Assembly: GCA_964252035.1 (NCBI GenBank)
Contig: CAXUOO010000157.1
Strand: one strand, 5' to 3'
Length of the DNA stretch: 64,000 nucleotides
Source: Podarcis erhardii
Taxonomy: Eukaryota
The notes beneath the pieces were generated by a model, which worked only from the letters and a program-made list of their open reading frames with translations, was not told the DNA's origin and did not search any database. The position numbers and the translations under genes were made by a program. Of the stretch, positions 29,018-48,748 are shown one piece after another (the first letter of the stretch is position 1; each line of letters starts with the position of its first letter).

Positions 29018-32000
29018 ATGAAGACACCCTCTTACAGCGAAAGAAGCGAAGCCCAAAGAAAGCACCATGAAATCTCTGCTTCTTCTCCTTCTTCCGAAAA
29101 CAGCGGCTCACAGTCTCTGCTGCTTTTTCAGGCCTGCTGCTGTCGCACCTGCAACTTCGCGCCTGCTGTTCTGCAGTCGGCTCCCACGAAATCTTCCTTT
29201 CTCTCAACTTTCACTGGAAAAAAACAAACATGCAAATCCTCCACCGAAACTGCAGGTCAAGCACAGCTAGCCACAGGTGAAGCACTAAGTGAAGAAGGTG
29301 AAGCAAAAAGCGAAGCAGCAGGTGATTTAGGTGAAAAAGCAACAGCAGGTGAAACTAGTGAAGCAACCACAGGTGAAGCAACTGAAGCAAAAAGCAAAGC
29401 AGGTGATATAGGTGAAAAAGCAACAACAGGTGAAGCAAGTCAAGCAACAACAGTTAAAGCAAGTCAAGCAAAAACAGGTGAAGGAAGTGAAGCAACAACA
29501 GGTGAAACAAGTGCAGCAACAATTGAAGAAAGTGAAGCAACAACAGTTGAAGCAAGTGAAGCAACAACAGGTGAAGGAAGTGCAGCTACAATTGAAGCAA
29601 GTGCAGCAACAGTTGAAGAAAGTGAAGCAAAAAATCTAGCAGGTGAAACAAGTGAAGCAACAGTTGCAGCATGTGAAGCAGCAGTTGAAGCAAGTGAAGC
29701 AACAATTGAAGCAAGTGAAGCAACAGTTGAAGCAAGTGAAGCAACAACAGTCGAAGCAAGCGTTGTAGTTGAGGCTGCTGATGCTGCAAGAGTGAATGCT
29801 TTGGCAACTGCAGAAGAACCTGAAAATTCATCAGTTGCAGCAGTAGACGGTGAGCACAGAGCAGTTGCAGCTCAACCACCAGCTGCAGCAGCACAAGATG
29901 AAGAATTGACAGCAAAAGCAATTTCTGCGACAGTTTCCCCAGTGAATTTGACAGCCTCAGCAGCAACAGCAATAGCAACAGAAGCACCACCAACACCAGC
30001 GATTGTAAGATCTGCTGTGGAAGTTGCAGAGGCACCCGAAAAAGCGACTGAAGCAGCAGTAGTGGCGGTTACAGCATCTGCAGCAGAATCAGAAAAAACG
30101 AAAGCAGCATCTCATGTAGCAGCCCCAGCAGTAGGTTTCAACGCTCTGCGCAATGCGGCAGCTTTATCGCTCAGTTTGCCCGCTAGAAACTCCAGTGTTG
30201 ACTTCAGAGATCATGGCTACGAAGTCATCACTTTCGTAGGTAAAAAGCCGACTTCAAGATCTTGAAATCACAGTCAATGGGTGCTTCTATGATACGTTTC
30301 GTCGATTGTGAAACTTGACAAAGAGGCTGGCGACAAACGACGTACAGTCATATTACGGGGCAGCGATTTACCGAAACAGAATCTTTGCAGAGACCCCGTG
30401 TAGATTGATATACTCATATATATATGTATATGTATATATATGTCTTCAGCCACACAAGAATGCGCATACTCACCAAACAAGTAATACTGCACAAAATATA
30501 TTTATTTATTTACGTATTTGGAGATGTGATCACAGTAGCACTATGTAGCAGCACGTGCTTTCAAATACACGAAATGTGGAGGATGTCAGAAGTCGTTATG
30601 AACTGGCGATGGGTGCTCGATTTCTCTTGTTGCACACATATGTATATAATGTTTATGCAATTGAGTATTATGCCGTTTAGAATCACAAAGTAACGTTGGT
30701 TGACGTTTGAACTGAATTGGAAAGATTTTTTTCTGAGTTTGGAGCGTGTCTGCTGGTGAAAAGATAGTGAATTTCTTTTTGCAAGTATCACCTTCACTTG
30801 ACTTAGCGTCAAATTGAAAAAAGGTCATTTTCGGCGTATTCAAATGATTCTACACAAATGTCGCTTATATTGTAGGGGCGAATCAGCCGTTGGATGCCGA
30901 GCTGCCGCATGCAGCAGAGTGAACTGTGCTTGCGCTAGATAACAGAATCCTCAATTTGAGTGTTGAACAAATATCCTAGTACTAAGGAATCTTTATTAGG
31001 CTATATGTGGAATGCAGATTTGACTCTCAATACTCAACTGGCTAGTCCTACACTTGAAGGTAACTCCAGCCGTAGGCGCTAACATTGAATTTGAAGCAGC
31101 CCAACTATCTACATAAGATAACTCATCTCCTCACGCACACAGAAAAGCAGTACGTTTGCACAAAACTACGATATTGGCTGCGTGCAAGCTTATTATACGA
31201 ACAGAAAAATAAACATATTTCAAATAATACATACACATTTTTACATCTATATAAATGTAAATATGTCAAGTTCGTGAATGTATACATATATATATATATA
31301 TATGTATATTTGTATATATTTGTATATATTATATATTTGTATATATAATATATATATATATATTTATGCATGAGTCATCTGCTCGTTTAGGAAGAGGACA
31401 GTTTGGGCGAGCTTTTCGAGTGCGGCGTCTCTGCGACAGCAGTGAATGGTTGGCAAAGCAAATTGACTTGACTAGTTTAGACGAGCGTGATCGCCGTATG
31501 AGCCTTCAAGAAGCGGAAGTAGGTCCTAATAGGGTTCTGCTGTTGACTTTAGGGGACTGCAGTGAGAAAGATTTGACTGCTGATTTGTTACCGTGGTGAT
31601 AGAGCCATCTAGCTGTTTCTGCAGTTGCTGCAGCTATGAGAAATTCAGTTTCAACTGCGGTTCTTCTATTGCTGCTGCTGCTGCCGTGTACATCTCCTTT
31701 CTGCTGCTGTTGCTGCAGTTATGCTTTTTTTATGTGATGCTGCTTTTTCTGTCTCACTTGCAAAGATTTAGACACTTCGTTTTTTTCTGTCTGCACACAA
31801 CTCTGTAACGTGCAGTCGTTTCTCCCAAAGTCTCTACAATGGCTTGCATACATATTATCCACTTTGTTGTTGCTGCTTCATAAGTTTCCGTTACTGAGGA
31901 AGAAATCCTGTTTTTGCTGAAACTTTGCTCTTCTTTGTAGCTGCTGCCTCTGCTACTAGTGCTGGTGGTGCTTTTGTTAGACGCGCTGCTTATTGACTGT

Positions 32001-35000
32001 TCGGCTGCATGTGTGTGAGTAAACAGAAGCGTTGAATTTTCGTTTTTCTGTGCTTTTTTCCTGTATATTTTTCATTAGTATTTTACAGTAGTGCTATCTT
32101 TGGCAGAAAGTTTCATCAAAATGTATATTTGCCGCACGAAGTGAATGCAAGCGAGTTTTCATACTTTACCCCTGCACTTGATCGCGCTGTTCCTGCTGCT
32201 AGTCTAAAAAGCAGAGTACTCAAGTCTTAATCTCCTTTTCTCCATACACTGTTTCAAATGGACGAAAGCTTGATACATGCATCGACGCATCTATATCCAC
32301 AGATGTATACACATACAGAATCAGTTTCCAGAAATACATGCACTGTGCACTCCATTTTTCCTCATTTTTTGTCTCAACACATCCTCACGCGCTGACGTTG
32401 CTGCTGCTGCAACACCATATACATATATATATATATATATGTGTGTGTATATGTGAGCATATGTTCATGTGTACATGCCTGAAAAGTGACAAAGAGTATC
32501 TGCATATTTCGCTTTCTCCGTTTTGTCTCTGTGCGTGGTGCCAATGGGGTGCGATGAATTCAGTGTAGTCAGCAGCCCCACATCTGTTTTCGCTATTTCG
32601 GTAATAAACTGAAGCTGCATTAGAAGATGCATTGCAGCCTCAAGCCAGTGCTTTCTTTACTAATTTGCTGGTGCTGCTTGTGTTTTATCGTAGTGCAGGC
32701 ACTGCAGCACTTTTGTGGTGGTGATTTGCTGTCTGCTGCTCTTCTAGCGATCTCCCTTTCTCTTTTCGAAAAACGCCTGTGTGTGTGTGTGTGAATATAT
32801 ACTGGTATCCTCTCTAACATATATAGTTGAGTGTCTGTACAGGCCATCAGTTTCTGACTTTCACTTGTTTCTGCGACTTTCGCTGCTTCTCTTTGCTTTT
32901 TTCGGTGCGTTTGGCACTCTTTCCACCAAAACTTCGCTGTTCAGTCGAGGCTTTTCTCGTGTCTGACCTCTGTTTCTGTGCATTGCTGTTGCTGTGTTGT
33001 ACTGAGTCTGCTCCATTTATTGAATTCTGTTCAGAAACAGCCACCTGCAAAGAGACCAACGTGAAGCGCCTCAATTTCTCCGTGCTCTTCTCTTCTTCAG
33101 CAACGCACTGCACCTCTTCCTCACACACATACATACATATACATATATGTAAATACTCACATCTCCAACTTTTCCTGCTTTCTACTGCGGCTGCAATACT
33201 CCTCTACCTCTTCTCGTTGTTGCGCTTTTTGTGTGTTGGGCAGCTCATGAAGCAGCTGCAGCACCCATCAGTGGTGCGTTGTGTGGAGTCGTTTGTGCAA
33301 CACGACATGTTTCTAGTGATCGTGATGGAGTTTTGCGAACGAGGAGACTTGAGCGCGCTGCTGCAGCGAGTGCGCGTTTCTCGCTCGTTCGTGGAAGAGC
33401 ACTTGGTCGTGAAGTGGCTGCTGCAACTGACGACTGGCCTGGCGTACATACACTCGCAGCACATTCTGCACCGCGACTTGAAGCCGAGCAACATCTTGCT
33501 AGACACTGCGCAGAACGTGAAAATCGGCGACTTCGGCATCAGCAGAGTCATGAGCTCCACGACTCTCGCTCTCGCCCACACCGCAGTGGGCACTCCTCAG
33601 TACATGTGTCCCGAAATGTGTGCGAATCAGCCCTACACTTTCAAGAGCGACGTGTGGGCGCTGGGCTGTGTGTTGCACGAAGTCTGTGCCCTGAGCAGTG
33701 CCTTTGAAGGCGACTCCTTCATTGCCCTTGCTTGGAACATTGCCTTCAAACCAGTCAAAAACATTCCCTCGCACTACTCGGCCAGTTTGCAGCGCCTCAT
33801 CAACGAAATGCTCGACAAAGACCCTCACAAGCGCCCGCTGCCCAGCGTCGCACTCACTAGTTGCGCTTTCACTTCTCTGCTGCAGCAGCACGGCTTCTCA
33901 CTCTCGCCCCTCGCTGCTGCTGAAACTGCCACTTCTCTCTCTGCTTCAGAAGCTACACTCGCGGAAAAAGCGGAAAAAGAAACAACTCAGCAGTTGCTGT
34001 TTTCTCCACAGTCACTCTCTCCCTCCTCTCCACGTGAACAACGACAAGTGCGTCCAGTTCTGCTCCACCACTGCAGCCACCACACACAGCTGTCGGAAAC
34101 TCGCTCTGGGCCTCGCTCCTCCACTCACGCTCCGAAAAAGAAGAGTCGAACCAGCACTGGTAGTCGTGGTGATAGTAGTGGTGATAGTGGTGATAGTGGT
34201 GGTGGTGATAGTGGTGATAGTGGTGGTGGTCACACACGCGCTTCAGCTGATGCATGCGCTGTACATGGTGCTGGTGCTTTTTCACCACAGTCGCTGCTCG
34301 TTCTCGCTCGTTCAGTTCCCCTTCTGGTGCATGCACACTCTGCAACGAAAACGGAAACAACAACTCGCCCAGAACCCCTCGAGAAAGAACCAGCAGCTGT
34401 CACAACCTCTCCTGCCACAACAACTCCTCTTGCTCTCACTGCCACCCACCACTTTCCCTCTCCCTCTTCTTCTTCCTCTTCTTTTTCCTCTTCTTTTTCC
34501 TCTTCCTCTTCTTTTTCCTCTTCCTCTTCTTTTTCCTCTTCTTTTTCCTCTTCCTCTTCTTCCTCAGCTGCTTTCACTGGTGCAGCTCATACTGCTCAGC
34601 AATTATTACCACCACCAGTGCCACTACGAGGACATGACGCAGCAACATCACCACTATTGATATTGCCTTTTCCTGCAGCTCTTTTGCCTGCTGCTACTGC
34701 TGATAATGATAATGATAATGATAATTTTTCTGTGAAAGAAAGTCCTTCTGCTGCTGCTGTTGTTGTTGCACCAACCACCAAAAATCTGCAAAAAACTCCT
34801 CACCCAAACAATCACCCCCCAAACAACCACCACCAAAACAACCACCCTAACCACCCAAACAACCACCACCTAAACAACCACCACCACCACCTAAATAACC
34901 ACCACCTAAATAACCACCTTCACCACCCTTTTTTTGAGGGCTTTTCTTTGAAAGCCCCAGGAAAGGCCCTTTCGTTTTGCAGCAGCGCCAGCCCCACCGA

Positions 35001-38000
35001 TGAAGCGTTGGCTAGTCGCAGCAATTACCACCACCACCACCACCACCATCACCACCATTTGCTCAGAAGTGCGAGCAACCACCTCAGCGAAAAGGTGGGC
35101 TCAAAAACTCGCCACCACCACCACCACCACCACCTCGACCAACAACAACGGGGCTTGGGCCACAGACGCTCCAAAAGCCAAAGCAGCTCAGCTTCTCACC
35201 AAAACCACCACCATTTCTACCACCATTTCTACCACCATTTCCACCATTTCCACCACCACTCAGACACACTGCTCCACCCCTCGTTTTTCGACAGTGTCTG
35301 TGCTTTTGACGATAAGAACAGTGCGAATACTCTCACGAACAGCACGAGTAGACTCGGCAGTAGAGGGAGGAGCCCCACCACTAGTGCTCCTGCTAGGAAA
35401 AATAGCAGCAGCACTTGCAGTGGTAGTGGTGGGTGGAGGTGCAGCCCTTGGGTGGGTGAGGACGTGGTTCATTGTAAGCGCAGACTTTCGAGTGGTGAGA
35501 ACGAGGACGGAAAAGGCCGAGGAGGAGACGTGTCTGTTGAGGCAGAAGTAGACACAACAACGTCTAAGATTCTGCGTTTTCGCAGTGGAATTTTTCTCGC
35601 TGCAAAATCACGGCGGTTGTTGCGGCGGCAGCCACCGCGACAAGTTGCTCTTTTTCAGGCTCGCTGTTTCAGTTTTCGAGGCTCGTGGAAAAAAGCGAAG
35701 AAGAAGCGAGTTCTTCGTCCTCTTCTCCGCCTCCACGGAAACAACGCCTTTTTCGAACAAAAGAAAAAAGAAACTCCGCAGCTAGCAACAGCAACAGCAA
35801 CGCGAGTCAGCGGCACTCGCACTCGGCTCCTTTCAACTACTGGTGGCGCTTTTTCTGCACTAAAACAGTCGCGAAAAAACAGACACACACAAACCAAACA
35901 ACGAGTGGTCGTCTGGAAAACTTCCTCCTCGTTAAAGCGCAAACATCCGCGAAAGTCTGAGCAGCAGTTCCACTGCAAATATGGCTCGCAGAATGTCGGA
36001 GAGTTGAACGAGAGTGGAAAGGAGAGGTGGTTGTTTGCAGAGGACGCCAAGAAGAAGACTTCGGACTGGAGTGGAAGTGCCACGAAAACAAGTGCCTCGA
36101 AAAACAGAGCAGAAAAAAACGCAGCTTTTCTAGCCGCTAATTTCGCCTCCTCTCAAAGTTTCACACACACTGCACAGCACAGCGACACACACACTGCAGG
36201 GGCAGCAACACAAACAGAGGGGAAGCGTTTTCAAGGAGAAAAAAAGGAAGCAGTTTTTCACTGCAAGTCAACTCCTTCACCTTCTGCAGTTGCCGGCAAG
36301 CAAGCGAAATTTCGTGGCGCTGTTCCCTTCACTTCTTCTGCGAACTTCTCTTCTAGCGCTGATTCTGCTGCGACAGCACCCACCGCTGCAGAAGCAGCTA
36401 AATTTTCAATCATCAAACGCAGCAAGAAATCAAGCAGAAGTAGACACAGTCGTGAAAGCCATCAAAACAGTCAAAGTGGCTCTCTTTCTGTCTTTGCTGT
36501 TGGAGCTGTCGACGACGAGCGGTTGTACGCAAAATTCATTTTGGGAAGACTGAAGGAACAGTACGGACGAAAGCGAAAGTCTAAACCGACTGGTTTTTGT
36601 CTAGTTTTTCTGCGCGTGTTGTTTGCGACCGTTATTACTGCACATAGCCCCTACTGTCATTACGCCTTTAGTTACGTGTCAAATCTTAGAAGCTGAATTC
36701 TACTTTCGGATACACGCGTTTCAAGAGCAACATTCATATGCACCACTTCACACATGTCAGTTTTTATATGGAAGGGTTATGCTGCAATCATGCATTCTCA
36801 CCATGTGTGTGATGAACGGGGATATATTTTTTCGTGTCTATTTCGAAAAGTCAACAATCTCTCTCCTTCGCATGTGTAGACGAGCAGTTCGGCGCTCACG
36901 TCAAACTCTACGCACACACACCTACTTTATGCAAATGTGTATATATGTCTGTGTTTAGAAGAAGGAAGAAAATCAAAGACACACACGAAATTAGTATACA
37001 AATGTACACCAGATATCCGGACATTTCCATATACTCGGCCCTTCAGCTGCTCACACTCTGCAAACAGTTACCTAAATGATCTTCACGTGAATACGACGTT
37101 TCGTGTCGCTATCAGACGTGAACAACAAACGTTATGTAAGCAGTAGCTGAAGGGCATCATCAATCACGAACCCTATGCACGACTTTCTTTCGAAAATAAA
37201 TTTTGCTGGCCTGAACAAAGCACAAGTTTTGAGTTTCTCTCTGCTCTTCATTGTTCTTCTCCATAGCTGTGCATTGCACTCTCTGTATCTCTGTTTCAGA
37301 CTTTCTCTTTTTTCTATTCCTGTGTGTCTCCTTGTCTCCAAACTCGAGTATTTTCTGTCTCTCAGATTGTCTGTCTCTCATTCCGTCTTTTGTACAGATT
37401 CCTCTTCTTTGTTTTCTTCTCCTTCTTCCCTCTCTCCATCTCTGTTGTGTGATCTTGTTCTTTCAATCATCTCGAGCTGTCTCTTGTTCTTGAAGTCTTT
37501 TTCTCTCTCTCTCTCTCTGCTTCATCTCCTTGCTATGTAGACTGCTCATTTCATACATTCAAAAAGAGAGAGACACAGATACACAAAGTAGCGAAGAAGC
37601 TGCATCTAGACTCAGGTAGTCTGATAGGATCAATCAATTACAACCTGTGTTTCGAGGTACGGTTTTTCTTCCAAATAATATATTTACAAAAAAACACGGC
37701 TGCAGAGCTGCTGCGCTGTGGTGGTTGATGCTGTCCCCACACTTACTGCTGCTCAAGAAATCTTGCAAAAGCGCACTGAAACGTCTGCTTTGCTTGCGTG
37801 TACACATACAGCACTTGTAGATGGATTCAGAAATTTCCAGTATTTCTCCCTGCTGCATTTTGCCATCTCTGCTGCTGACGCTTCGAAAAAAAAGAGCCAA
37901 AAACTATATCTCTAAGTAGAGAAAACCGACCAAGCGCGGTCCTTTGTTTGCTGTTTTACACGATGAAAAACGGTGCTGTTGGCTGCTCAAACGCGTGCTG

Positions 38001-39424
38001 TTGAAAACGCGAGGCTGCTGCTCTGGTGATGTGCAGCTTTACTCTGATAAAAAAGCTCATTTGTTGTGGTGTATTGCTGCTCTACACTATGCTGCTACTG
38101 TAGTTGGTGCTGGAATAGCACACGTCAGGTGCTGTGTGTCTTTGCACAGTTTGCATTCAAATTGGGTGCTGGTGTGCTTCACACGCACAGCTGTCTGTTC
38201 TAACTGCCATATATATAAAAAGTGGGGTGTACGTAGTGGTGAGATAATATTCTTGTCAGTTGCAAATTCTGGAAGCGTAGATGAAGATGTGTAGACGTTG
38301 GTGCAGCCGCTGTGCTGTAGAAGTGCTGCTGCTTGTGCGAGTCTCACTGCGGGTGTACGTACACTGCTTGGGGTGTACGTAGTGGTGAGATAGTATTCTT
38401 GTCAGTTGCAAATGCTGTTCCAGCATCACTACCATCTACACATAACAGAAACATATATATATATATATGATGAAGATGTGTAGACGTTGGTGCAGCAGCT
38501 TGCAGTTTCACGAGTGGTTGCTGTAAAAGTGCTGCTGCTTGTGCGAGTCTCACTGCGGGTGTACGTACACTGCTTGGGGTGTATGTACAGCCTGGAGCGC
38601 AGCGGCAAGTCGTCTTTCGCGTTGCTGCAGGAGTCTTTCCTTCCCAGAAACTCGCCGGCAGCTTCTTTTTCTCAGCGCCCACGCCTGCATTTTGACTCTC
38701 AAAAGCGGCATTTCTTTGAGTCTAAAGCAGCAGCTTCAACAGCTGCAACGGCAGTGAAGCAAGTCCAGGCAGCAGCAGCAGCAGTAAGTGCAGGAAATGA
38801 AAATGAGAGTGAAGAAACGGCAGGCACAGCAGACTTTTCGGTGAATCTGCGGCTGTCGCGGAATAGTAGTAGTAGTGGTGCAGCAGCTCCCGCGTTCTCA
38901 GCTACTGAGCAGATGAGAGGAACTTCTGCAATTGTTTTTGCAGCAGACTCATTAAGACAAAGAAATTTGACTGCAGATATGACCACTTTTGCAGGAGAAA
39001 CGCTGCTGTGCAGAGCAGAGAGTAGCGAGGCGTTGACGAAGAAAGCAATGACAGCAAACGCAGCTGGAGGAGCTGACCACGTGTCTGCAGCTGTAGCAGT
39101 AGAAGTAGTAGCAGAAGCAACTGCGAATTCGACGTCGTCTTTTGCGGCTTCTTCTTCCATTTTAAGTGAGCTTTTAGAACAGGCAACCCTCTATCAGGCA
39201 ATCGCATACAGTCTACCTCTCGAATTTCGTGTGTATGTATGCTTATCTGTGTATAAGCTGAGTGTGTGGGGTGCAGAACGAACACACACAAACACTCGTT
39301 ACGAGAAACTTCATGACTCACTCTGACGACAGTTGCGTGTCTGCGCCTTGGGTGCAACCTCGTCTTGAATCTACAGAAAATATGCAACTTTTTCATATTC
39401 TTACAAATGTCAGCATAACCATAC

Positions 39425-39457
<33 letters not shown>

Positions 39458-42400
39458 ATGTGAAAAGTATATCAAGTAAGTTTTACGCTTGTGCTGAACA
39501 GAGAAACCACCAGAAGCTCGGAAGTATGCCGGCACGACTCAGGTAGCTGTGGTGTCTACATCCAACTTCGAAACAACATACGACTATATTCAAACACATA
39601 CATATGTCAGTGCAACGCTTGTGCTGTGTGCAACACTGATAATTTAATTTTGTTTTTTTGTGCGGCACTTCTTCTGCGCACGTTTCTGACGAAATCTGTC
39701 TTATATTTACCGACTTGTTAGTGGATGATTTCTGCGTAGTGTCCCTGTGCTCTGCTCTACAATCAGCTGCGGCTGTCGGTCTGAAGTAGATCATTTGAAC
39801 ATATATTTCATTCATATATATATATGAATTGTAGCGTGTTTCTTGGATTGACTTCCTCAACCTTGTCCGATTGTGCCTCTTATATACACGAAATGTGTTG
39901 AATTTGGTGTTTCTTCCTCTAAATTGGAGGTCGATTCAAAGGCATTTACGTTGGCTCTCTCAAACAAACATAATTAACGCTAACTGTCGCTCTTCTTCTC
40001 CTGCAGCGAAAGTGTTTGTGTGTGTGTGTGATGTTTCCCGTGTGGTTACCACTACATCTACTACTACTACTCTCACTACTACTACAACTACAGAGCAGCC
40101 ATTGACTCTGAAATGGCTGCTTACTTTCGCAAACCTACTTGGGGCTGGACTGAGCAGAAGCGAAGCAGAGCTTTTACTGCAGCAACTTCCCCTTGTTTTG
40201 CAGCAGCAGCAGACAAGACAGCAGTGGAAAAAAGGCGAGTTCCAGCAAAATTTCCAAAGCAGCAGTTTAGACCCCTCCAAAACCAGCAGAGCACTTTTTT
40301 TGCACCTTCTCTGCATCGATTCAAAAGCCAGGGCGACTAGCCACTGTCTAGACAGCGCTAGTGGAGAGACGCAGAGCCACAGCGAAAGCAGCAGTGGTGA
40401 TGATGGCAGCAAGAGAAGCAGTGGTGGTTGCAAATTTCCTTTTTCTGCTGCCAGTAAACCGACAGCTGCCTTTCTCGCAGGCGCTCTTGCAGACAGTCGT
40501 TTCTTTTTTTTGCAGAACTATCGCAGAGCAGTGAAGTGGGCAGCAGAAAATGTGTGGCAAGCTGCTTCTGAGTGCTTCTTTTGTTTCCAGCCAGTTCCAG
40601 CAGTCGCTTTTGCGGCTGCAGAAAAAGACTCAACAGAAGTTCCACGACTTTCGGCAGACTGTGCGCATGCATCGTCCGCGTCAATTCGAGCTCTTTCTGT
40701 CCCCTTTAAAGCAGCGAAAAACTCTGCAGCGCCAGCAAGGATGACTTGTGGGGAAAAGACTGCTTTGAACTTGAACGGCTGCGCCTCTGATTTTCTCTGT
40801 CCAACTAGTGCCCCGCTAGCTGAGCGTGGTGGGGGGAAAAATGCAGTTTCAGACAAGCAAGTTGGAGCAGTTGAGACAACTTCTTCTTCTTTTGAGCAGC
40901 TGCAGCTCCTTTTCTGGAAACACTGGAAGGCCTCGTTGTTGCGCCTCTTTTCTCAGTTCGACCAAACAAATACGCGCTGCATTTCCCGGTAATTTGCCTC
41001 AAACCTGCAGCGCTTTTTCGCTCTCCTTTTTGCAGTCTGGCACACACTTGTATTGCTGTTTCTGCTTTCTTGCATGCAAAGTGACTTGCAGCTTCAGCTC
41101 GCAGCAGACAAGTTTCCTTCTTGCTTCGGCAATCCACTCAAAAGTGCATGCAATAGCCACAAAAAACACCACTCAATCCCGTCTTCTCGGCAACCCGCTT
41201 CTTGCAGACCTTCTTACGCAGATTGTGGAAGAAGTCTTGGGCTCTATTTACTGCTGCTTTTTTGCATGTGCATAACTATATGTGCGACGAGCTTCGAATA
41301 CCTCCACTTGTCTACATGCGCATGCATGCATTGGTTGTTCAGGAAGAATTTTCACAGGGCGCTTTCAGCGCTTTCTTCAGCGTTTTCAGCGAAACAAATC
41401 AAAGTTCTCTATCGCCTTTCTCCCAAAACATACACTGGAAGTGTGCGGTAAGCATTTCTACGATGAAGAAAAGGCATGCACCACTGCACACAAATCCCAT
41501 AAACTGACAGCACAAAGTCCCAAAACTACATGCGTCCATACAGTTGACCCTATATCATCGAGGAGAGTTGTTTGTGTGTAGTGATGATGAGAGGTGTACA
41601 TCGAAAAAAAGCTTGTACTGTATGCGGTGCGTCTCAGTGCTGTCCGTAGAAAAATAGACTATATAGATATATATAGTTTATATATGTATAGAGGGGATTC
41701 TGTGTACGAAATTGTCTGTATAGATCTCCGTAAATACAGAGACATTGAAGGTAAAACGGGGGACGTGTAGAGCTGGTTTGGTGTGTGAGGAAGGAAAGAC
41801 ACAACTTTCAGACATTGTGTCAGAGAAGACTTATGTGTTTTTGTTTCGTTTTGTTTGTTTATTTGCTGCTCTGCTGTTGCTGTGGCTGCAGATATGACCA
41901 GTGGATAGAATCTTTGCAACTGCATGCGCATCCACTCCTTCTTCCTGCACCTTTTCAAGCACAAAAACAGCAGACAAAGACAAACGAGCAACTCCACCGC
42001 AAGTTTGCTGAGTCAAACTTCGAGGCAGAAAACTGCTTGGACCAACGGCTTTTGCAGCCCCTCTCTGAGGACCTGTCTGAGGCTTTTCCAGTCTTTGAAA
42101 AAAATCTTTTTCAGCAGTGCATGCATCGTCCGTCGTGTTTGAGGCAGTCCTTTTCCAGGCAAGAGTCGGGTGATTGCGACGAAAAGAAAGAGTTGTTGCA
42201 CAGAAAAGACTGGAAATCGCAGAGCAGCAGCCCTTTCTCTGAATCTGCAGCAGCTGAAGGTTTCGAAGAAGAAAGTTCAACTGCATGCGGCTCAAAAAAA
42301 GACGTCGAGCAACAGCGAAGGGCGACAGCTAGTGAAGCAGTCATCGCCACAGGGCCTGCACCAGCAAGAGCAGCAGCAAAAAAAAAAAGAGCCAAAGCAA

Positions 42401-45400
42401 ATAAGTTAGCAGCAATAACAGGAAAAGAGAAGGACTCAACACCACTAGCAAGTTTGTCTGAGCAGGCGAGTGCGATAACAGGAAATGTTTCGAGTTTTTT
42501 GAAGACTGCACCAACGGAAAAAAAGCACCAAAAGAAGGCAGGGGACTTGTGGCTAGTAGAAGGAGACGCCTTTTGCTTTTTCAAAGAAGAAAGTGGAGCG
42601 TGGAGAAAAAGCCAGGAAAACGCAGCAGCAGCCTCACCACCACTGTCTTTTTCGAAACTGGGCGCGGAGCAGTCTGTGTGTGCGAGTTCTGGTCGGCTGC
42701 AAGTGCTGAAAGAGACTGCTGAGCAACGCAGGGAAAATCGCAGACACAATTCACTTCCTCCAGTGTTCATTCCTCTCGCAAAAACTTCCCCCAATCCGCA
42801 GCCCTTCTTCCAGCACACGTACGTGGCAGCTCACGAAAAGAGAGTGGTGATTTTTGCTGCTGAAAAAAAATGTGTGGCGACCGCGTGTTTTTCTGCGTTT
42901 CGAGTGAAACTCCCAAAGCAACTTTGAAAGATTTGTGCTCTTGTTTTCGTGTGGAGAAACTGTGACTTTCCTGCACGACGATTGCTGAGTCGGTCGGCAG
43001 TGTTTCGTCGCGAAAGTGTGCTGCTTCGACTTTGTTTTTTGCATGCAGATCCAACCGAGCCTCTTCGCCACTGGCTGCTGGCCACTGCAGTTGTTGTTGC
43101 TTGGAGATTCAGCGCTCGCCTTCTCACGAAGAAGAGGAGAACTTGACGAAGCAGAGCATTAGTGGTCGCCAGCAAAGGGGTGGAGAAGAAAAGCCGCTCG
43201 ACTACTTCTTCGAAGGAGGCGACAACGACAACAACAGCAGTCCCCCCTTAGCCACAGACAGCGCAGAAGGAGGCCCAACAACGAGTGTGCAGTGTTTCGG
43301 AGAAGAGCAGCAGTGGAGCCACCACACCCCTCCTTCGCAGCGAAGCAGCGACTGCTGCAGTTTGCGGCCTCCAAAAAAGGCGCTTTCTTCTTCTTCTTTT
43401 GCAGCTGCTGCTACTTTTTCGTGTCCGACCACTAGTCGTCACTTCGACAACAACTCCCAGAGCCACAAATCTCCTCGTCACTCCTTGGAGGACTCTGAAG
43501 CAACAAGCCACTCGTCTGCATGCACCGTGAAAACGAGGCCGCTGCAGCTGGCACTGCCCCAGCAAGAGCAGCAGCGACGAGCGACGAGTCGCACAAGTGG
43601 AAAAGCAGGGGGCGCAGTGAATTTCGAAGAAGAAGAAGTGGCAGCGACGTCTGCAGCAGGCGGCTCCACTACTGCCACCGCTGAGCCGTCGACTGCAGTG
43701 ACTGAGGCGCTGACGTCTTTGTCTTCTTCAGTCGCTGCGCTACTCACTTGTCCCCACAACTCTGCGACAGACTCTCTCTCTCCTTTCTTCGGCTCTGCGT
43801 CCTCACCCCCAGTCAGTTGCTGCTCCGTCGTCACCACCACTGCCACCGTCGTCACCACTTCTGCGGCTTTTGTTCAGCCACCACCACCTCTACAACAGAC
43901 CCCAAGTAGTTGTGCAGCAGTGGAGCAAACTAACCGAGAACAACTCACGCACTCTCCAGCTGCTGCAACACCCACCGCCTTCCCTTCCCCCTCAAAGCGT
44001 CGATCGAACCAACTCCAGCCACCACAAACACTCCACCCACAACAACGCCAGACGCAAAGTCCGACTCAACCACTGGCGCTCCTTCAAGTCCCTTTTCCAC
44101 CACCTCCATCACCTTCATCACCACCTTCACCACCCCCGACTGCAGTAGACACGCTTTTTTCTCCCCTTTCCGTGGCTACTGCAGAGGCTGAAGAAAACGC
44201 CACGGAAAAGGTCCTTGCTTGTTTCCTGCCTCTTCTTCCCACCAGCGCCAGTCCGTCGCCTTCTCTCAGTGCGGCGATTTCCTGCTGCTCAACTCTCTTC
44301 GACACCAACTCACCCTGCAGCAGCACTGCCGACAAGCCCCCCCCCCCGCAGCCGACGACTGCCGGGCCGCGCTGCGGGGTGACCTCCGCCTCGCCGTCCT
44401 CGTCGGCAGCGACTCCCGCGGCGGTCGCGGTCGTTGGGCTCCAAGTCGGCGCCGCCGACGCGCGCTCGGCGCCCCGCGGCGCTGGAAGTGGCTGGGGAAG
44501 TCGTCGCTGGAGAGAAAGAAGCGGGAGACGAAGAAGAAAGCGGGGAAGTGGATTCTTCTGCAGAGAAAGTCGAAGAAGAGGGGCTGGGCAGTGGCTGGCA
44601 ACGACGACGAACTGCTTCGATCAGGAGAAGAGGGGCTGCAGTTGTCGTCGTCGCTGCTTCGTCAGGCGCAGCAAGCAAAGAACAACAGCCTGCTGCTGCT
44701 GCTGCTTCTTCTCTGCTGTTGCCTCTCTCGTTTTCAGCAGACAAAAAAGAAGAGGAAAGCAGCAGCAGCAGACGGGCCAGTGCAGACGAAGACGGTCAGT
44801 CGCTGGCTGCAGCGCTGTCTGGTGCGAACTCGCCCCCTCTAGCGACGACTGCCTCTGCTAGCAAACTTTCTTCTGCGGTGTTTGGCGTGGAAAATGACGC
44901 AGCTGCACCACACGTTCCAAGTAGACACAAACTGGCTCCAGCAACGGCTGCTGCTTTCGCTGCGTCTGCTGTTTCCTCTTCTCCACCAGAAACTACTGCT
45001 CCTGCTGCTGCTCCTTTTTCGACAACAAAAAGAAGCTCTGCAAAGCAGCAGCGATTCAGCCACTCAGTTTCCACTCCTTTACGCACGAAGGACTGGCCAG
45101 TTTTCACTGCAGAAACTTTCAACGAAGCCAGCAACGCCTCTGGCAGTTGCAGGATGCGTCGCTACTCTTACAGCTGCTTTCTTCCCGATTTCTGCGCAGC
45201 TCAACAGCCACGACGAAAACAATCGAGACTTCCGTCAATAGCAGGTGCAAGCACACTTGGTGAATGTAGAAAGACTAGACACAGGTGTCTAGTTGCCTCA
45301 CACTGAGCAGCAGTTCACAAAAGTTCAACGAACTCATAATAGAGTGCCTGCGACTTGGAAATAGAGAGTGTGTGACTGCACAAGCTCTGCAAGGTTGCAG

Positions 45401-48400
45401 CAGCACATGCAACAGCAGCAGAGATCGCTTTTTCTGCTGCATGTGTTGGTTAACAACAGCGCAAAACGTTGTAGAGAAGCCAGACAGCACTTCTTCTCTT
45501 CACATTGCATGCACGTAACTTCGAAACACACAGAAACGCAGATCTGCAATGACATCAAAGCACTAAAAAACCACACGCCAACAACACAGCACCCCTCTTG
45601 AAGAAGAGCTGACTGTGTGATTTACACGGCAGCGCTAGAAAATAGAAGGCTTCATTCTATGATGCTGCTGCTTCTTCAAAACAGCCGCTAAGTTATACTG
45701 CTGCTGCTTTTGCGAAGTTTCTCAAAGGTGAAGCAAGTCCAACGCGAAAAGGCGAGGCCAAATCAGACACACACATATACATATATATATATGTGTGTGT
45801 ATATTTTCGATTCTACAACAACACAGTAGGAACTTTTTTTCTTATGGACATGCATTCAACTTTGTTGTACTAACCAGCACACGTCTCCGAATTTGTATGT
45901 GTGTGGGGCCTTCATCATGATCACTCCACGAATTCAAAGAGAAAATATCTATGCATGTGTGTGCATAGTTTGGGAGCATCCACATAAGGAAAAGGCGCAA
46001 ACAAGAGCTCCACCAGTAGTTTGGTTTAGACAGAAGCAGGCTGCGATTGAGTTGCATGCACCACCACTTGAAGCATGTGTCGCGACGCAAGAAGAAACTT
46101 TGTTTTTTTTATTGACATGCATTTGAATGAAACCAGTCAGTCTGCAGCAGCCCCAACGTCTCTGTCCCGTTTTTCTGAAGAAAAAGGCGCCACTGCAGGA
46201 ACGCGTTTGATTTTTGCATTGTTCCACTGTTTTTTCTCCAATTTGAAGCATTCTTCTTTCAAACTCAAAGCCTCTGAATAATAATGCGAGTTGCATGTGT
46301 GTGTTTGAGTGCTGATTTTTGTGCAGGAGCGCATGCGTCTGCGAGACAAAGATTTCAGTTGTTCGACGAAACGGACCGAAGAGAAACTGCTGGAAGAAAA
46401 ACAACGAGTGAAGCAAGTCGAACTGCTGCTGTTTCTCTGCAGCAACTGACAGACGACGAGTGGCCACATTCCCCAGTATTTCTGCGGCTGGTTTCGTCCT
46501 CAAACTGCATGCAGCAAACAAATTCGCGCCCTTTTCTTCCTCCAAGCGAGAGCGACCCAACAAACTCTCCGAGCTCAAAGTTGACGCAGCAGCAGAAGCT
46601 CCTTTCTGCGTCTCCTTTGCGAGTTTCTGCAACTGCAACTAAACCAGCAGCAACTGCAGAGTTTCCTGATTCTTTTTCTGCTTTTTCTCCTTTTTCTGTG
46701 GGTGAATCCACCAGTTCGGAAGAAGAGGCTGAAGAAAGAAAGCTCTTTGCAGCCGTCGACGCTGCAGTTGATTTTCCGTGTGAAACTACTAGCACAGAAG
46801 GAGTGGCAACACTGGAAGTTTCCTCTGCTGGTGCATGCGTTTTCAGCAGCAGTTCAGAAACTCTCTCTTCAAGCGCTTCTTCTTCTGGTGCAGAGCAAAA
46901 CACTCGTGGTAAAACATGTGTTTGTAGTGAAATTGGGCTTCAACCACCAACGTTTTCGAATCGCCCTTTTTTCAAGTCTCCTTTTCGCTGCGTTTCTCCG
47001 CACTCACTCGTTGCTGGCTCAACCAGTAAGAAAACGAAAACTAAATCTATCACTGCAAATAATCATCCTTCTTCTTCTTTTGCTACTGCTGCTTCTCCAC
47101 TGATTGCAGCAACTGCCTCAGCCTCCACGACTTCCACTACTGCAAATGCTTCAACCGCCAAAACTGCTACCAGTATATATCCTGTCTCTTCTTCTTCTCT
47201 TTCACATGCTGCCCTTGCCTCGTCAAAAACAAAAATCCAAACAACTCCATTTACCACACAAAAAACGCCATTTATCACACAGAAAACTCCCATTTTCACC
47301 CCAAAACGCCAATTTTCACCCCAAAAAACGCCAACTTTCACCCAAACAACTCCTCTTTTCACCCCAAAAACTCCATTTATCACCCCAAAAACTCCATTTA
47401 TCACTCAACCCACTCCATTTATCACTCAACCCACTCCATTTATCACCCAACCCACTCCAGTTTTCAGTCAATCTACTCCAGTTTTCAGCCAAACAACTCG
47501 AAGATTCTCAGCAGCCACGGAAAGGGAGAGTCGATTGCTTTTTTCCAAAGAAGGAGGCGTGTTCAGCAGTTCTACTTCTTCACTTTCTAGTGGAGCGAAT
47601 TTAGCGTCACAAAATATCAAAAGCGTTTTTCACTCCTTTTTGCCCCTCCACCAGTCGACTTCTTTTTGCAACAGCAGCAAGTTCAACGAAACCAGCGAAA
47701 AAAAATTCAACGAAAGATCCAATAAAAGAGATAGAAGCAATTCACTCACCACATGCACTAAAAAAGATAGAAGCAACTCACTCACCACATGCAACAATAA
47801 AGATAGAAGCAATTTACTCACTACATGCACTAAAAAAGATAGAAGCAATTCACTCACCACATGCACTAAAAAAGATAGAAGCAATTCACTCACCACATGC
47901 ACTAATAAAGATAGAAGCACTTTGATCCACAGAAAAAGGATTAAAGATAGAAGCAGCAGCTGCAGCGCCGACGACGAAAGAAGCAGCGAGAGCGAAGTGG
48001 AAGAAAAAGGAGAATTTAGCTCGCGGATTTTGAGCGTTTTTGGCGCAGAAAAAAGCGAAGAAAAAAGAGCGCATTTGTGGGAGAAAGCGCCGCAGAAAGA
48101 GGGACAAACGCTTTTCACAAGAATCGACGAGAAGTGCGCAGCAACAACTACTGAAAGTGCAGCTGCTGCAATCGATGGTTTTTCCAGCCTTTCGCAGCGC
48201 TCACTAAAAACGCCAGTGTGGTGGAGCAATCGAGACAGTTCCTTTTTCTTTTTTTTTCTCAAAATAAAAACAACAAACAAGCGAGGCAAAACGCAGACAG
48301 AGCGACTGCTGCTGCAGTGCACTTGAAAGCGCAAAAAGAGACTTCAAGTGAGCCGAAAAACAACTGCATGCACCAGCACTGTTCACTGCACTGTATTGGT

Positions 48401-48748
48401 TTACGTGCAGAAAAAAGAGAGCCACAAACACAGACAGAAAAAGCGCAGAACCACCAGCAGCAGCAGCGCGGCTTTTTGTTTCGAAAAAAAGAAAGAAAGC
48501 TGCAAAAAAAGCAGCACAAAGAACTAGTGCAGGCTCAAAACAGACGTCTGTTGTCGTCTCCCACAATTCAGGCAGGCTCTTCTTCGCTTCTTTTAAGTGA
48601 GCAAGTCAAAATTCCATTTTCAGCATCGCAAAACTCTACACAAACAACTCCAAGAGACTCGATTGCTGCTACTGCTCAGGCCCTCTTTGTCTCTGTCGAA
48701 GTCATGAAGAAATCCACTTTTTCGAAAAAAGTCCTCATCTCCAACTAA
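29018..48748 (+). CDS. NEK: Giant NIMA-related (NEK family) Ser/Thr kinase with low-complexity extensions and EF-hand-like motifs; exons 29018-30239, 31391-31518, 33244-36560, 38591-39228, 40094-40988, 41343-41447, 41892-42818, 43049-45244 (or 45259), 46327-48748
   Basis: The spliced kinase domain has all key motifs: YEVITFVG|RGQFG, AKQI, LQEAE|LMKQL, HRDLKPSNILL, DFG, GTPQYMCPE, DVWALGCVLHE, DPHKRP. All eight proposed introns are GT-AG and phase-compatible (1,0,2,1,2,2,2,1). Two 1-nt frameshifts must be assumed (C4 at 44472-44475; T9 at 48249-48257). The kinase part is secure; linkage of the downstream exons into one transcript is inference. Confidence 0.7.
29270..29765 (+). repeat. Degenerate coding repeat (GGTGAAGCA/ACAACA/GAAGCAAGT units) encoding GEA-TT-EAS/VEAS peptide repeats
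   Basis: ORF 29018 reads ATGEA, ATTGEA and ATVEASE repeatedly; the Gln-rich (+) and Leu-rich (-) ORFs here are shadows of the same repeat. Confidence 0.85.
30218..33870 (+). CDS. NEK: NEK-type protein kinase catalytic domain (three exon pieces: 30218-30239, 31391-31518, 33244-~33870)
   Basis: Gly-rich loop GRGQFG, catalytic Lys (AKQ), alphaC Glu, HRDLKPSN, DFG, GTPQYMCPE and YTFKSDVWALGC are characteristic of NIMA-related kinases. The first 139 aa of track ORF 32827 are intronic. Confidence 0.95.
34460..34565 (+). repeat. (TCT/TCC/TTT) microsatellite encoding poly-Ser with Phe
   Basis: SSSSSSFSSSFSSSSSF... in the kinase-exon frame. Confidence 0.9.
34800..35270 (+). repeat. (CAC/AAC) repeats encoding His/Asn-rich tracts
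   Basis: HPNNHPPNNHHQNNH..., YHHHHHHHHHH, RHHHHHHH and HHFYHHFYHHFHHFHHH in the long kinase-exon frame. Confidence 0.9.
38224..38582. repeat. Mosaic tandem duplication within the putative NEK intron
   Basis: GGGGTGTACGTAGTGGTGAGATA.TATTCTTGTCAGTTGCAAAT at 38224 and 38370; ATGAAGATGTGTAGACGTTGGTGCAGC at 38281 and 38470; AAGTGCTGCTGCTTGTGCGAGTCTCACTGCGGGTGTACGTACACTGCTTGGGGTGTA at 38320 and 38528. Confidence 0.9.
47244..47495 (+). repeat. 21-nt coding minisatellite, 12 heptads (consensus TPFITQ/PK/P)
   Basis: ACTCCATTTATCAC(C/T)C(A/C)A(AAA/CCC)-type units: TPFTTQK TPFITQK TPIFTPK RQFSPQK TPTFTQT TPLFTPK TPFITPK TPFITQP x3 TPVFSQS TPVFSQT. Confidence 0.9.
47724..47918 (+). repeat. 36-nt coding minisatellite, 5 copies plus a partial (KKDRSNSLTTCT)
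   Basis: AAAAAAGATAGAAGCAATTCACTCACCACATGCACT-type units in the 46284 ORF frame. Confidence 0.92.

What the first reader, a model, noticed from the sequence alone, without database searches (positions are those of the whole stretch)
29018..48748. A ~20-kb gene encoding a ~3,900-aa NEK kinase, assembled from ORFs that look unrelated in the track
Nine exons join with canonical GT-AG sites and matching phases: 30239|31391, 31518|33244, 36560|38591, 39228|40094, 40988|41343, 41447|41892, 42818|43049 and 45244 (or 45259)|46327. Junction peptides read naturally (ILGRLKEH|LERSGKSSFALLQESF; CISR|KNFHRAL; GSVR|YDQWIESL). NIMA-related kinases control mitotic entry, centrosome and flagellar biology (established) and are usually far shorter. 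The size and the downstream helical/EF-hand-like region suggest a coccidian-specific architecture.
Basis: partly seen in the sequence, partly recalled or inferred. Interest (0 to 1): 0.7.

Follow-up and report, generated by a model that had tools for sequence, protein, structure and literature searches.

The report
Giant coccidian NEK kinase gene
The gene is real but wrongly delimited: a parasite's NEK cell-cycle kinase of more than 5,000 amino acids spread over at least 35 kb, and its far end carries a bacterial-type NIT sensor domain that the published gene models of Toxoplasma's relatives seem to cut off.

Summary
All nine quoted GT-AG junctions exist. Exons 1-7 (29018-42818) are confirmed by collinear homology to coccidian and Rhytidocystis NEK proteins. 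As written, the model fails after that. Exon 8 runs through a stop at 44859, because the reading frame changes near 44.45 kb. Exon 9 mixes two frames, and 48748 is not the gene's end.

An independent DNA contig of run X1 has one letter fewer at 44472. That is exactly where codon statistics place the frame change, so exon 8 is probably one exon broken by an assembly indel.

Conserved exons continue at 52.7, 55.2, 56.5-58.0, 59.5, 60.9 and 61.9-64.0 kb. Their phases are consistent and the last is still open at the window's end. That gives about 15 exons, at least 35 kb and at least 5,159 aa.

The architecture is NEK kinase, then a degenerate EF-hand pair, then a C-terminal NIT domain. In orthologs the NIT domain scores above the Pfam threshold, and a predicted structure matches NasR at Z 22. 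The architecture is not coccidian-specific, because Rhytidocystis transcripts carry it in one ORF.

Giant NEKs of 2,880-3,322 aa are already annotated in Toxoplasma, Hammondia, Besnoitia and Sarcocystis. The three models I could read (the first three) all stop in mid-NIT domain. No RNA data exist for this organism. The scan had already noted the EF-hand pair on this window.

The parts
29018..30239 (+). Exon 1: start codon, about 380 aa of low-complexity N-terminal extension, then the conserved pre-kinase motif and the first kinase strand
   Evidence: Stop-free, donor GTAAAA. The last ~30 aa match Hammondia and Besnoitia at 72-86% identity.
31391..31518 (+). Exon 2: glycine loop and catalytic lysine of the kinase domain
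   Evidence: 89-91% identical to Hammondia and Besnoitia over 45 aa. Phase fits.
33244..36560 (+). Exon 3: rest of the NEK kinase domain (HRD, DFG, APE-type motifs present), then about 800 aa of low complexity
   Evidence: Pfam Pkinase 171.7 bits. Best PDB matches are NEK1/7/2. 66-70% identical to Toxoplasma, Besnoitia and Cystoisospora.
38591..39228 (+). Exon 4: linker
   Evidence: GT-AG and phase fit. The ungapped continuation across 36560|38591 resembles T. gondii and Rhytidocystis at collinear positions, but the match is weak (z about 2).
40094..40988 (+). Exon 5: helical region and the first half of the EF-hand-like pair
   Evidence: Head matches Hammondia 1075-1104 (z 9.2) and tail matches 1260-1276 (z 3.7), both collinear. 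The T. gondii FOU partial model ends at exactly this exon end.
41343..41447 (+). Exon 6: middle of the EF-hand-like pair
   Evidence: z 3.1-4.4 against four orthologs at collinear positions, with no gaps.
41892..42818 (+). Exon 7: end of the EF-hand-like pair, then low complexity
   Evidence: Phase and GT-AG fit. The head is collinear with Hammondia 1313-1324 (weak).
43049..45244 (+). Exon 8: low-complexity exon, broken in the window by a one-letter frame change near 44472 (alternative donor at 45259)
   Evidence: Codon scoring shows one frame best at 43000-44200 and the next frame best at 44500-45100. A contig of run X1 has one letter fewer at 44472 (depth 3). Each half is stop-free.
46327..48133 (+). 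Exon 9: low-complexity exon with in-frame 21-nt and 36-nt tandem repeats. The donor is unresolved; candidates are 48076, 48133, 48156, 48217, 48220 and 48316.
   Evidence: 682-codon open frame at 44% GC with a codon-score signal. Repeat periods are multiples of 3. Donor list.
52692..52841 (+). Exon 10: NIT helix 1 (the Q-x-E-R signature). The acceptor is tentative; the donor is firm.
   Evidence: z 15 against Rhytidocystis P0003 1197-1219 and z 5-9 against four others. Donor CAG|GTGAAA.
55195..55316 (+). Exon 11: NIT helix 2
   Evidence: z 4.0 against P0003 1221-1251, collinear. This is the only acceptor that restores the conserved Arg codon, and the donor is GTAAGA.
56493..57996 (+). Exon 12: NIT helices 3, 4 and the first half of helix 5, with long low-complexity inserts between them
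   Evidence: The middle motif (z 5.3) and the tail motif (z 7.7-11.5) are collinear. The T. gondii, Hammondia and Besnoitia models all end at this exon end.
59468..59628 (+). Exon 13: second half of NIT helix 5, and helix 6
   Evidence: z 12.7-18.2 against four orthologs. It has the only phase-fitting acceptor, and the donor is GTAAGC.
60899..61135 (+). Exon 14: NIT helices 7-8
   Evidence: z 7.8 against P0121 1991-2028 and z 4.5 against P0003. It has the only acceptor that fits the phase of 59628.
61931..63999 (+). Exon 15: low-complexity tail with the two conserved C-terminal motifs. Still open at the window's last base, so the stop codon lies outside the window.
   Evidence: 707-codon open frame with a positive codon score. 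The weak motif matches fall at collinear positions in P0121 and P0005. Acceptor has a good pyrimidine tract.
51206..52469 (.). Degenerate (ACT)n repeat of 1.26 kb inside the proposed intron 9. It is open in some frames, so a coding role is not excluded.
   Evidence: TRF reports period 3, 422 copies, 75% matches. GC is about 0.30, against 0.45-0.59 in the exons.

Best explanation
The window holds nearly all of one plus-strand gene of a coccidian parasite, from 29018 to beyond 64000 (about 15 exons, at least 35 kb, at least 5,159 codons).

It encodes the orthologue of the annotated giant 'NEK kinase' of Toxoplasma, Hammondia and Besnoitia. By the Sarcocystis kinome paper's description of SRCN_3151 (size, kinase-domain position, best hit), that S. 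neurona gene is probably an orthologue too, and the paper groups it with TgNEK5 (TGME49_218400). I did not compare that sequence myself.

The protein has these parts, in order:
- a lineage-specific low-complexity N-terminus;
- an apparently active NEK catalytic domain;
- a linker;
- a degenerate EF-hand pair that probably does not bind calcium;
- about 2,000 residues of low complexity;
- an eight-helix NIT domain (the NasR fold) split over exons 10-14 and interrupted by inserts;
- a low-complexity tail with two conserved C-terminal motifs.

Inferred mechanism: the NIT domain acts as an intracellular small-ligand sensor or as an autoregulatory module that controls the NEK catalytic domain. Bacterial and algal NIT modules control their attached output domains in the same way. 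The output would be NEK-type phosphorylation of centrosome or microtubule targets.

Shown here: the gene structure by homology and phase, the NEK identity, and the NIT identity in orthologs. Inferred: the splice usage (no RNA is available), the ligand, and the coupling between NIT and kinase.
For: Kinase. Pfam hit; all catalytic motifs present; NEK1/7/2 are the top PDB sequence hits with a gap of about 40 bits to the next sequence (EGFR, 109.9 bits); the named hits of the protein search are NEK/NIMA kinases.

One gene. Transcript-derived Rhytidocystis ORFs (P0003, P0006, P0121), plus P0005 (a gene call on an assembled contig of unknown origin) and P0011 (a transcriptome ORF whose species I could not identify), hold the kinase, the EF-hand region, the NIT domain and the tail in one frame. 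The coccidian models link the kinase through exon 12. The window shows the same modules in the same order on one strand.

Splice chain. Five successive junctions from exon 10 to exon 15 were chosen by homology and all fit in phase. The 57996|59468 and 59628|60899 junctions had only one phase-fitting acceptor each. Every exon is stop-free.

Exon 8. Codon scoring places the frame switch at 44.3-44.5 kb, and an independent contig lacks one letter at 44472.

NIT domain. Pfam PF08376 scores above the 24.9-bit cut-off in P0011 (46.5), P0005 (37.7) and P0003 (26.9), covering profile positions 1-227 of 239. The nearest protein-language-model clusters are bacterial NIT (0.92-0.93). The AlphaFold model of P0011 residues 601-873 matches NasR 4akk_B at Z 22.2 over 253 residues, and the next hit is at Z 10.4. 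All eight helices have counterparts in window exons 10-14.

EF-hand region. Sub-threshold Pfam EF-hand hits appear in five orthologs, and the predicted fold gives EF-hand-like matches at Z about 9-10.
Against: There is no RNA evidence for this organism. The only public run that holds the stretch is DNA.

The large low-complexity exons 8, 9 and 15 rest only on open frames and codon statistics, and parts of them could be intronic. The exon 9 donor and exon 10 acceptor are unresolved, and further small exons could lie in 48.3-52.6 kb or in the N gaps.

The one-letter difference at 44472 rests on a single contig at depth 3.

The window's NIT exons give no Pfam hit when searched one by one. One Rhytidocystis paralogue (P0006) and the Chromera kinase (P0138) also give none at E 0.01. 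One residue invariant in the five orthologs (Arg in helix 6) is Gln in the window.

The annotated Toxoplasma-group models end at the exon 12 boundary. That could mean the transcript really ends there in that group.
Confidence: 0.82

Rival explanations
1. One reading: nine exons, a stop at 48748, about 3,900 aa.
For: All quoted splice sites are GT-AG, and seven of the eight junctions are phase-consistent.
Against: There is an in-frame stop at 44859 and 35 stops follow it. The last ~425 bases lie in another frame with no coding signal. Strongly conserved exons follow at 52.7-61.1 kb (z up to 18).
Confidence: 0.02
2. There are two or more genes. The NEK gene ends earlier, either near 36.7 kb or at 57996 as in the Toxoplasma-group annotations. 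The downstream conserved exons then belong to a separate gene.
For: The Cystoisospora model ends at the exon 3 boundary, and the T. gondii, Hammondia and Besnoitia models end at the exon 12 boundary. No RNA is available here.
Against: Rhytidocystis transcript ORFs are continuous across all these boundaries. Ending at 57996 would cut NIT helix 5 in half. The junctions 57996|59468 and 59628|60899 each had only one phase-fitting acceptor. Those annotated ends coincide with intron positions, which is the usual mark of a missed intron.
Confidence: 0.1
3. It is a decaying pseudogene. The frame change in exon 8 is real and the long open frames are left-over low-complexity sequence.
For: The window as given is frame-shifted, and the contig that differs has a depth of only 3.
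Against: The codon signal is strongest just after the shift. Fifteen exons totalling 15.5 kb are otherwise stop-free. The conserved motifs are intact through the last exon. The independent contig removes the shift at exactly the predicted place.
Confidence: 0.04

Closest known systems
Annotated coccidian 'NEK kinase' genes: T. gondii GT1 EPR63810.1 (2880 aa), Hammondia hammondi XP_008889337.1 (3026 aa), Besnoitia besnoiti BESB_039270 (3322 aa). From the literature only, not compared here: Sarcocystis neurona SRCN_3151 (3186 aa, grouped with TgNEK5 TGME49_218400).
   Same: The first three are orthologous. The kinase domain is 66-70% identical, with the same pre-kinase motif, EF-hand-like pair and NIT helices 1-5 in the same order. 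Intron positions appear shared, since the partial models end at the window's exon ends.
   Different: The window's gene is longer (at least 5,159 aa) because of bigger low-complexity inserts. It also shows exons for NIT helices 5-8 and the conserved tail, which the three models I read lack. No function has been published; the two T. gondii papers only list TGME49_218400/TGGT1_218400, which is linked to this family only through the Sarcocystis paper, in omics tables.
Rhytidocystis spp. transcript ORFs (GHVS01053596, GHVS01053600, GHVQ01042777; 1,718-2,591 aa)
   Same: The full architecture (NEK kinase, EF-hand pair, NIT domain, conserved C-terminal motifs) sits in one ORF derived from RNA.
   Different: They have much shorter low-complexity spacers and no long N-terminal extension. 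They come from agamococcidians, not coccidians proper.
NIT domain, PF08376 (NasR of Klebsiella oxytoca, PDB 4AKK)
   Same: Eight helices in two four-helix bundles. Ortholog P0011 matches NasR at Z 22.2 over 253 residues and matches the Pfam profile above its cut-off. The Q-x-E-R type signature of helix 1 and its echo in helix 5 are present in the window.
   Different: In NasR the NIT domain controls an ANTAR RNA-binding domain and binds nitrate or nitrite. Here it sits at the C-terminal side of a eukaryotic NEK kinase, thousands of residues from the catalytic domain, is interrupted by inserts, and has no known ligand.
Eukaryotic NIT fusions: pelagophyte NIT-Ser/Thr kinases (PMC9481584) and animal NIT-guanylyl cyclases (PMC7400543)
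   Same: A bacterial-type NIT sensor fused to a eukaryotic signalling enzyme. In Pelagomonas two such proteins are cytosolic NIT-kinase fusions.
   Different: The kinase class and the lineage differ, and I did not test for any relationship. [quoted passage not shown]
Human NEK1, NEK2, NEK7 catalytic domains
   Same: They are the best solved-structure relatives of the window's kinase exon, at 149-163 bits.
   Different: Human NEKs are far shorter than this protein (general knowledge, not a tool result) and pair the kinase with coiled coils, RCC1 repeats or other modules, never with a NIT domain. Only the RCC1 pairing in NEK8/9 was seen in a paper read here; the rest is from my own knowledge.

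Membership tests
NEK (NIMA-related) protein kinases | Complete eukaryotic protein-kinase catalytic core (glycine loop, catalytic Lys, alpha-C Glu, HRD, DFG, APE-type motif) | tested here: met
   All motifs are present in the translation of exons 1-3. Pfam Pkinase scores 171.7 bits for exon 3 alone.
NEK (NIMA-related) protein kinases | The catalytic domain is closer to NEKs than to any other kinase group | tested here: met
   The 16 best distinct PDB sequences are all NEK1, NEK7 or NEK2 (149-163 bits), and the next kinases score about 100-110 bits. The named hits among the best proteins are NEK/NIMA kinases. No tree was built.
NEK (NIMA-related) protein kinases | Role in mitosis, centrosome or cilium control | not testable with these tools
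   No functional study of this orthologue group was found.
NIT domain (PF08376) | Match to the Pfam NIT profile at or above the gathering score | tested here: inconclusive
   Met in orthologs P0011 (46.5 bits), P0005 (37.7) and P0003 (26.9), against a cut-off of 24.9. There was no hit for the window's exons 10-14 searched singly, nor for the truncated coccidian models.
NIT domain (PF08376) | Double four-helix-bundle fold as in NasR | tested here: inconclusive
   Met for ortholog P0011: Z 22.2, rmsd 4.3 A, 253 residues against 4akk_B, with pLDDT 60-90 in that region. The window's own domain could not be folded without joining exons. Its exons align to all eight helices.
NIT domain (PF08376) | Binds nitrate or nitrite through conserved arginines of helices 1, 5 and 6 | not testable with these tools
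   The arginines of helices 1 and 5 are kept in the window. One position in helix 6 that is Arg in all five orthologs is Gln. The role of the arginines is taken from PMC7496416.
EF-hand pair | Match to Pfam EF-hand profiles at the gathering score | tested here: not met
   The orthologs reach only 15-21.4 bits for EF-hand_11 (cut-off 21.7) and 17.8-20.4 bits for EF-hand_7 (cut-off 30). The window's exon 5 gives no hit. The fold of P0011 residues 234-418 resembles EF-hand proteins at Z about 9-10.
EF-hand pair | Canonical 12-residue calcium loop (Asp at 1, Gly at 6, Glu or Asp at 12) | tested here: not met
   The first loop in the window (end of exon 5 and start of exon 6) has Arg at position 6 and Asn at position 12. 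The Rhytidocystis loop has His at position 12. It has an EF-hand-like shape but probably binds no calcium (inference).

The most novel reading that the evidence does not exclude
Apicomplexan parasites, from Rhytidocystis to Toxoplasma-like coccidia, keep a cytosolic NEK kinase whose NIT domain senses a small anion such as nitrite or nitrate. These are the stable products of host nitric oxide. Such a sensor would link the host's NO defence, or nitrogen status, to the parasite's centrosome and cell-cycle machinery or to stage conversion. The current Toxoplasma-group gene models hide this because they stop in the middle of the domain.
Probability: 0.1. Interest if true: 0.85.

Novelty: new member of a known kind. 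Interest (0 to 1): 0.5.

Why it matters
The gene itself is the counterpart of giant NEK kinases already annotated in Toxoplasma's relatives, so its size is no surprise to specialists.

Three points are useful.

(1) The true gene is about twice as long on the DNA as proposed and runs off the window.

(2) The family's conserved C-terminal module is a NIT domain. This sensor fold is rare in eukaryotes, and I found no paper that describes it in Apicomplexa.

(3) The public models of T. gondii, Hammondia and Besnoitia all end at one exon boundary in mid-domain. That suggests a shared annotation error, which existing Toxoplasma RNA data could check.

A ligand-sensing module on a cell-cycle kinase of an intracellular parasite would give a concrete, testable handle on how such parasites couple division to their chemical surroundings.

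Tried and rejected
RNA evidence. The run search found one holder, and it is DNA contigs at depth about 3, so no junction could be tested with reads. The two 'joints' seen in the contigs (44718>47185 and 45419>48447) have non-intron ends and short sides of 24 and 21 letters, one of them beginning in a CTG-type repeat. I take them for assembly artefacts.

I therefore could not check synteny or look for the missing last exons in Toxoplasma.

C11 run. I first suspected the C11 run at 44337-44347 as the site of the frame error. I rejected this because the downstream frame has a stop at 44380-44382, so the change must lie after 44382. The contig difference at 44472 fits.

Short intron. A short GC-rich intron could in principle explain the frame change. 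Many GT..AG pairs exist, but none resembles the gene's other introns, which are AT-richer, at least 230 nt long and have pyrimidine tracts.

Exon 9 donor and exon 10 acceptor. I listed the candidates but could not choose among them.

The (ACT)n block at 51.2-52.5 kb scores as 'coding' by codon statistics. Its GC of 0.30 and its simple-repeat nature make that unreliable.

Low-stringency tblastn over 45-64 kb mostly gave low-complexity noise.

Foldseek on the full P0011 model returned only kinases. The all-against-all structural search was needed to see NasR.

Not done. The big representative-protein search was not run, because it was costly and the protein was not left open. Scripts joined exon DNA only to translate it and check frames and stops; phases were otherwise checked by arithmetic and exon-by-exon translation.


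Full report
OBSERVATION.

Joining the nine exons as written gives 11,850 nt, but the translation hits a stop at 44859-44861 and has 35 internal stops after residue 3014. There are two causes. Exon 8 (43049-45244) opens in the frame that is open at 42966-44858 and closes in the frame that is open at 44383-45303. Exon 9 (46327-48748) follows a 682-codon frame that stops at 48324-48326 and then jumps to another frame. So the splice sites are real, but the 'matching phases' claim holds only for the first seven exons.

EXONS 1-7.

Exon 3 holds a protein-kinase domain that starts at Pfam profile position 50 (E 2.6e-50). Exon 2 supplies the glycine loop and catalytic lysine, and the end of exon 1 supplies a conserved pre-kinase motif.

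The word search found these relatives: T. gondii 'NEK kinase' (72% identity), Cystoisospora nek kinase, and long ORFs from transcriptomes. A second search with a long query found Besnoitia BESB_039270 (3322 aa) and the Hammondia NEK kinase (3026 aa). The T. gondii GT1 protein has 2880 aa.

tblastn and Smith-Waterman alignments with shuffle controls place window exons 1, 2, 3, 5 and 6 at collinear positions in these proteins. The heads of exons 4 and 7 match more weakly. For example, the exon 5 head has z 9.2 against Hammondia, and exon 6 has z 3.1-4.4 against four orthologs without gaps. The partial T. gondii FOU model ends exactly at the window's exon 5 end, and the Cystoisospora model ends at the exon 3 end. 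Those intron positions are therefore probably shared.

The kinase is a NEK. The 16 best distinct PDB sequences are all NEK1, NEK7 or NEK2 at 149-163 bits, and the next kinases score about 100-110 bits.

EXON 8.

A codon-frame score trained on the confident exons shows one frame best from 43.0 to 44.2 kb. The next frame is clearly best from 44.5 to 45.1 kb, which is the strongest signal in the region. The change must lie after the stop at 44380-44382 in the second frame.

The only public run that holds this DNA (X1, contigs, depth about 3) has one letter fewer at 44472. That is what is needed to make 43049-45244 one open exon. The evidence is a single low-depth contig, so this remains probable and not proven. 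The same contigs show a one-letter insertion after 47302 and a one-letter loss at 47323, which cancel each other.

With that reading, 45244 (or 45259)|46327 fits in phase.

THE GENE DOES NOT END AT 48748.

The C-terminal conserved region of the orthologs maps to the plus strand at 52.8, 57.9, 59.5 and 60.9 kb. A further small exon lies at 55.2 kb.

I chose splice sites by homology and then checked the phases:
- Exon 10 ends at 52841 with two letters left over.
- 55195 is the only acceptor that restores the conserved Arg codon. Exon 11 ends at the GTAAGA donor after 55316.
- 56493-57996 is a 1.5-kb exon that carries three conserved motifs in order.
- 57996|59468 and 59628|60899 have only one phase-fitting acceptor each. 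61135|61931 also fits in phase and has a good pyrimidine tract.

All exons are stop-free. The model sums to 15,477 nt, or at least 5,159 codons, and is still open at base 63999.

Shuffle z-scores are as follows: exon 10 z 15, exon 12 tail z 7.7-11.5, exon 13 z 12.7-18.2, exon 14 z 7.8. The two C-terminal motifs of the family fall at collinear positions in the last exon, but their scores are weak.

Still unresolved are the donor of exon 9 (six candidates), the exact acceptor of exon 10, and whether anything in 48.3-52.6 kb is coding. That stretch includes a 1.26-kb degenerate (ACT)n repeat. Three N gaps lie in the proposed introns, and I did not touch them.

WHAT THE PROTEIN IS.

Pfam scans of the compact orthologs show the kinase domain and sub-threshold EF-hand hits. 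They also show PF08376 (NIT, nitrate and nitrite sensing) above its 24.9-bit cut-off over nearly the whole profile: P0011 46.5 bits, P0005 37.7 bits, P0003 26.9 bits. Protein-language-model neighbours of P0011 residues 610-870 are bacterial NIT clusters at 0.92-0.93.

An AlphaFold model of P0011, built on a five-sequence alignment, has eight long helices at 607-871 with pLDDT of about 60-90. A search of 48,161 PDB representatives puts NasR (4akk_B, the type NIT domain) first at Z 22.2, rmsd 4.3 A over 253 residues. The next hit scores Z 10.4. That is well above the noise the tool itself quotes for helical bundles.

The region 234-418 resembles EF-hand proteins at Z about 9-10. The window's first EF loop lacks the glycine at position 6 and the acidic residue at position 12.

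The window's exons 10-14 correspond one by one to the eight NIT helices. Searched singly, they give no Pfam hit.

DISTRIBUTION AND WHAT IS KNOWN.

GHVS and GHVQ are transcriptomes of Rhytidocystis species, so the architecture is not coccidian-specific. Only the huge low-complexity spacers are.

The Sarcocystis kinome paper lists SRCN_3151, a 3,186-aa NEK with its kinase domain at residues 352-656, and groups it with TgNEK5 (TGME49_018400, cited in later papers as TGME49_218400). Two papers list that T. gondii gene only in omics tables. I did not show directly that this identifier is the GT1 protein used here.

NIT-kinase fusions are described in pelagophyte algae, and NIT-guanylyl cyclases in animals. 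Searches for NIT in Apicomplexa found nothing.

The T. gondii, Hammondia and Besnoitia models all end at the equivalent of 57996, which is half-way through NIT helix 5.

ORGANISM.

The kinase domain is 66-70% identical to those of Toxoplasma, Besnoitia and Cystoisospora. Earlier notes of the scan say that this assembly is a wall lizard with a co-assembled coccidian. The depth of about 3 in run X1 fits a minor component. I did not test the host claim.

VERDICT.

This is a real single gene. The first seven exons are right. Exon 8 is right only if the indel is allowed for. Exon 9, the gene's end and its size are wrong. The gene is a new member of an annotated but unstudied family of giant coccidian NEKs. 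The un-annotated NIT domain is the part worth following up.

Noticed in passing
P0238, P0123, P0122 (T. gondii GT1, Hammondia, Besnoitia NEK models); window 57996: All three public models end at the same residue, which is the equivalent of the window's exon 12 end. That cuts the NIT domain in mid-helix 5 and looks like a shared missed intron. The T. gondii model also starts inside the kinase domain, at the exon 2 equivalent.
   Followed up: partly
window 44472, 47302, 47323: Contigs of run X1 differ from the window by single-letter indels: one fewer at 44472, one more after 47302, and one fewer at 47323. The first removes a frame shift, and the last two cancel each other. Depth is only about 3.
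   Followed up: partly
window 51206-52469: A 1.26-kb degenerate (ACT)n trinucleotide repeat (422 copies, 75% matches). It is open in two frames as Thr/Ser/Asn-rich or Leu-rich peptides. GC is about 0.30. It is probably intronic, but a coding role is not excluded.
   Followed up: partly
window 47237-47499 and 47723-47955: In-frame tandem repeats inside exon 9: 21 nt x 12.5 copies and 36 nt x 5.5 copies, giving 7-aa and 12-aa peptide repeats.
   Followed up: no
window 10481-10936 (-): An ORF with a TMEM208/SND2 (SRP-independent targeting) Pfam match, E 2.2e-10. It is probably one exon of a neighbouring gene.
   Followed up: no
window 4500-6827 (+) and 15860-17431 (-): Long ORFs of 775 and 523 aa with no Pfam match. 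They are probably exons of unknown neighbouring genes.
   Followed up: no
window 53092-53351, 58121-58248, 61635-61775: Three N gaps, all inside proposed introns of the gene. The last is flanked by AGT-type simple repeats. I left them untouched; a small exon hidden in one cannot be excluded.
   Followed up: no
whole window: Introns and flanks are full of TA/CATA-type microsatellites. Introns in the 3' half are long (0.8-4.6 kb) and AT-rich (GC 0.32-0.39), against 0.45-0.59 in the exons.
   Followed up: no
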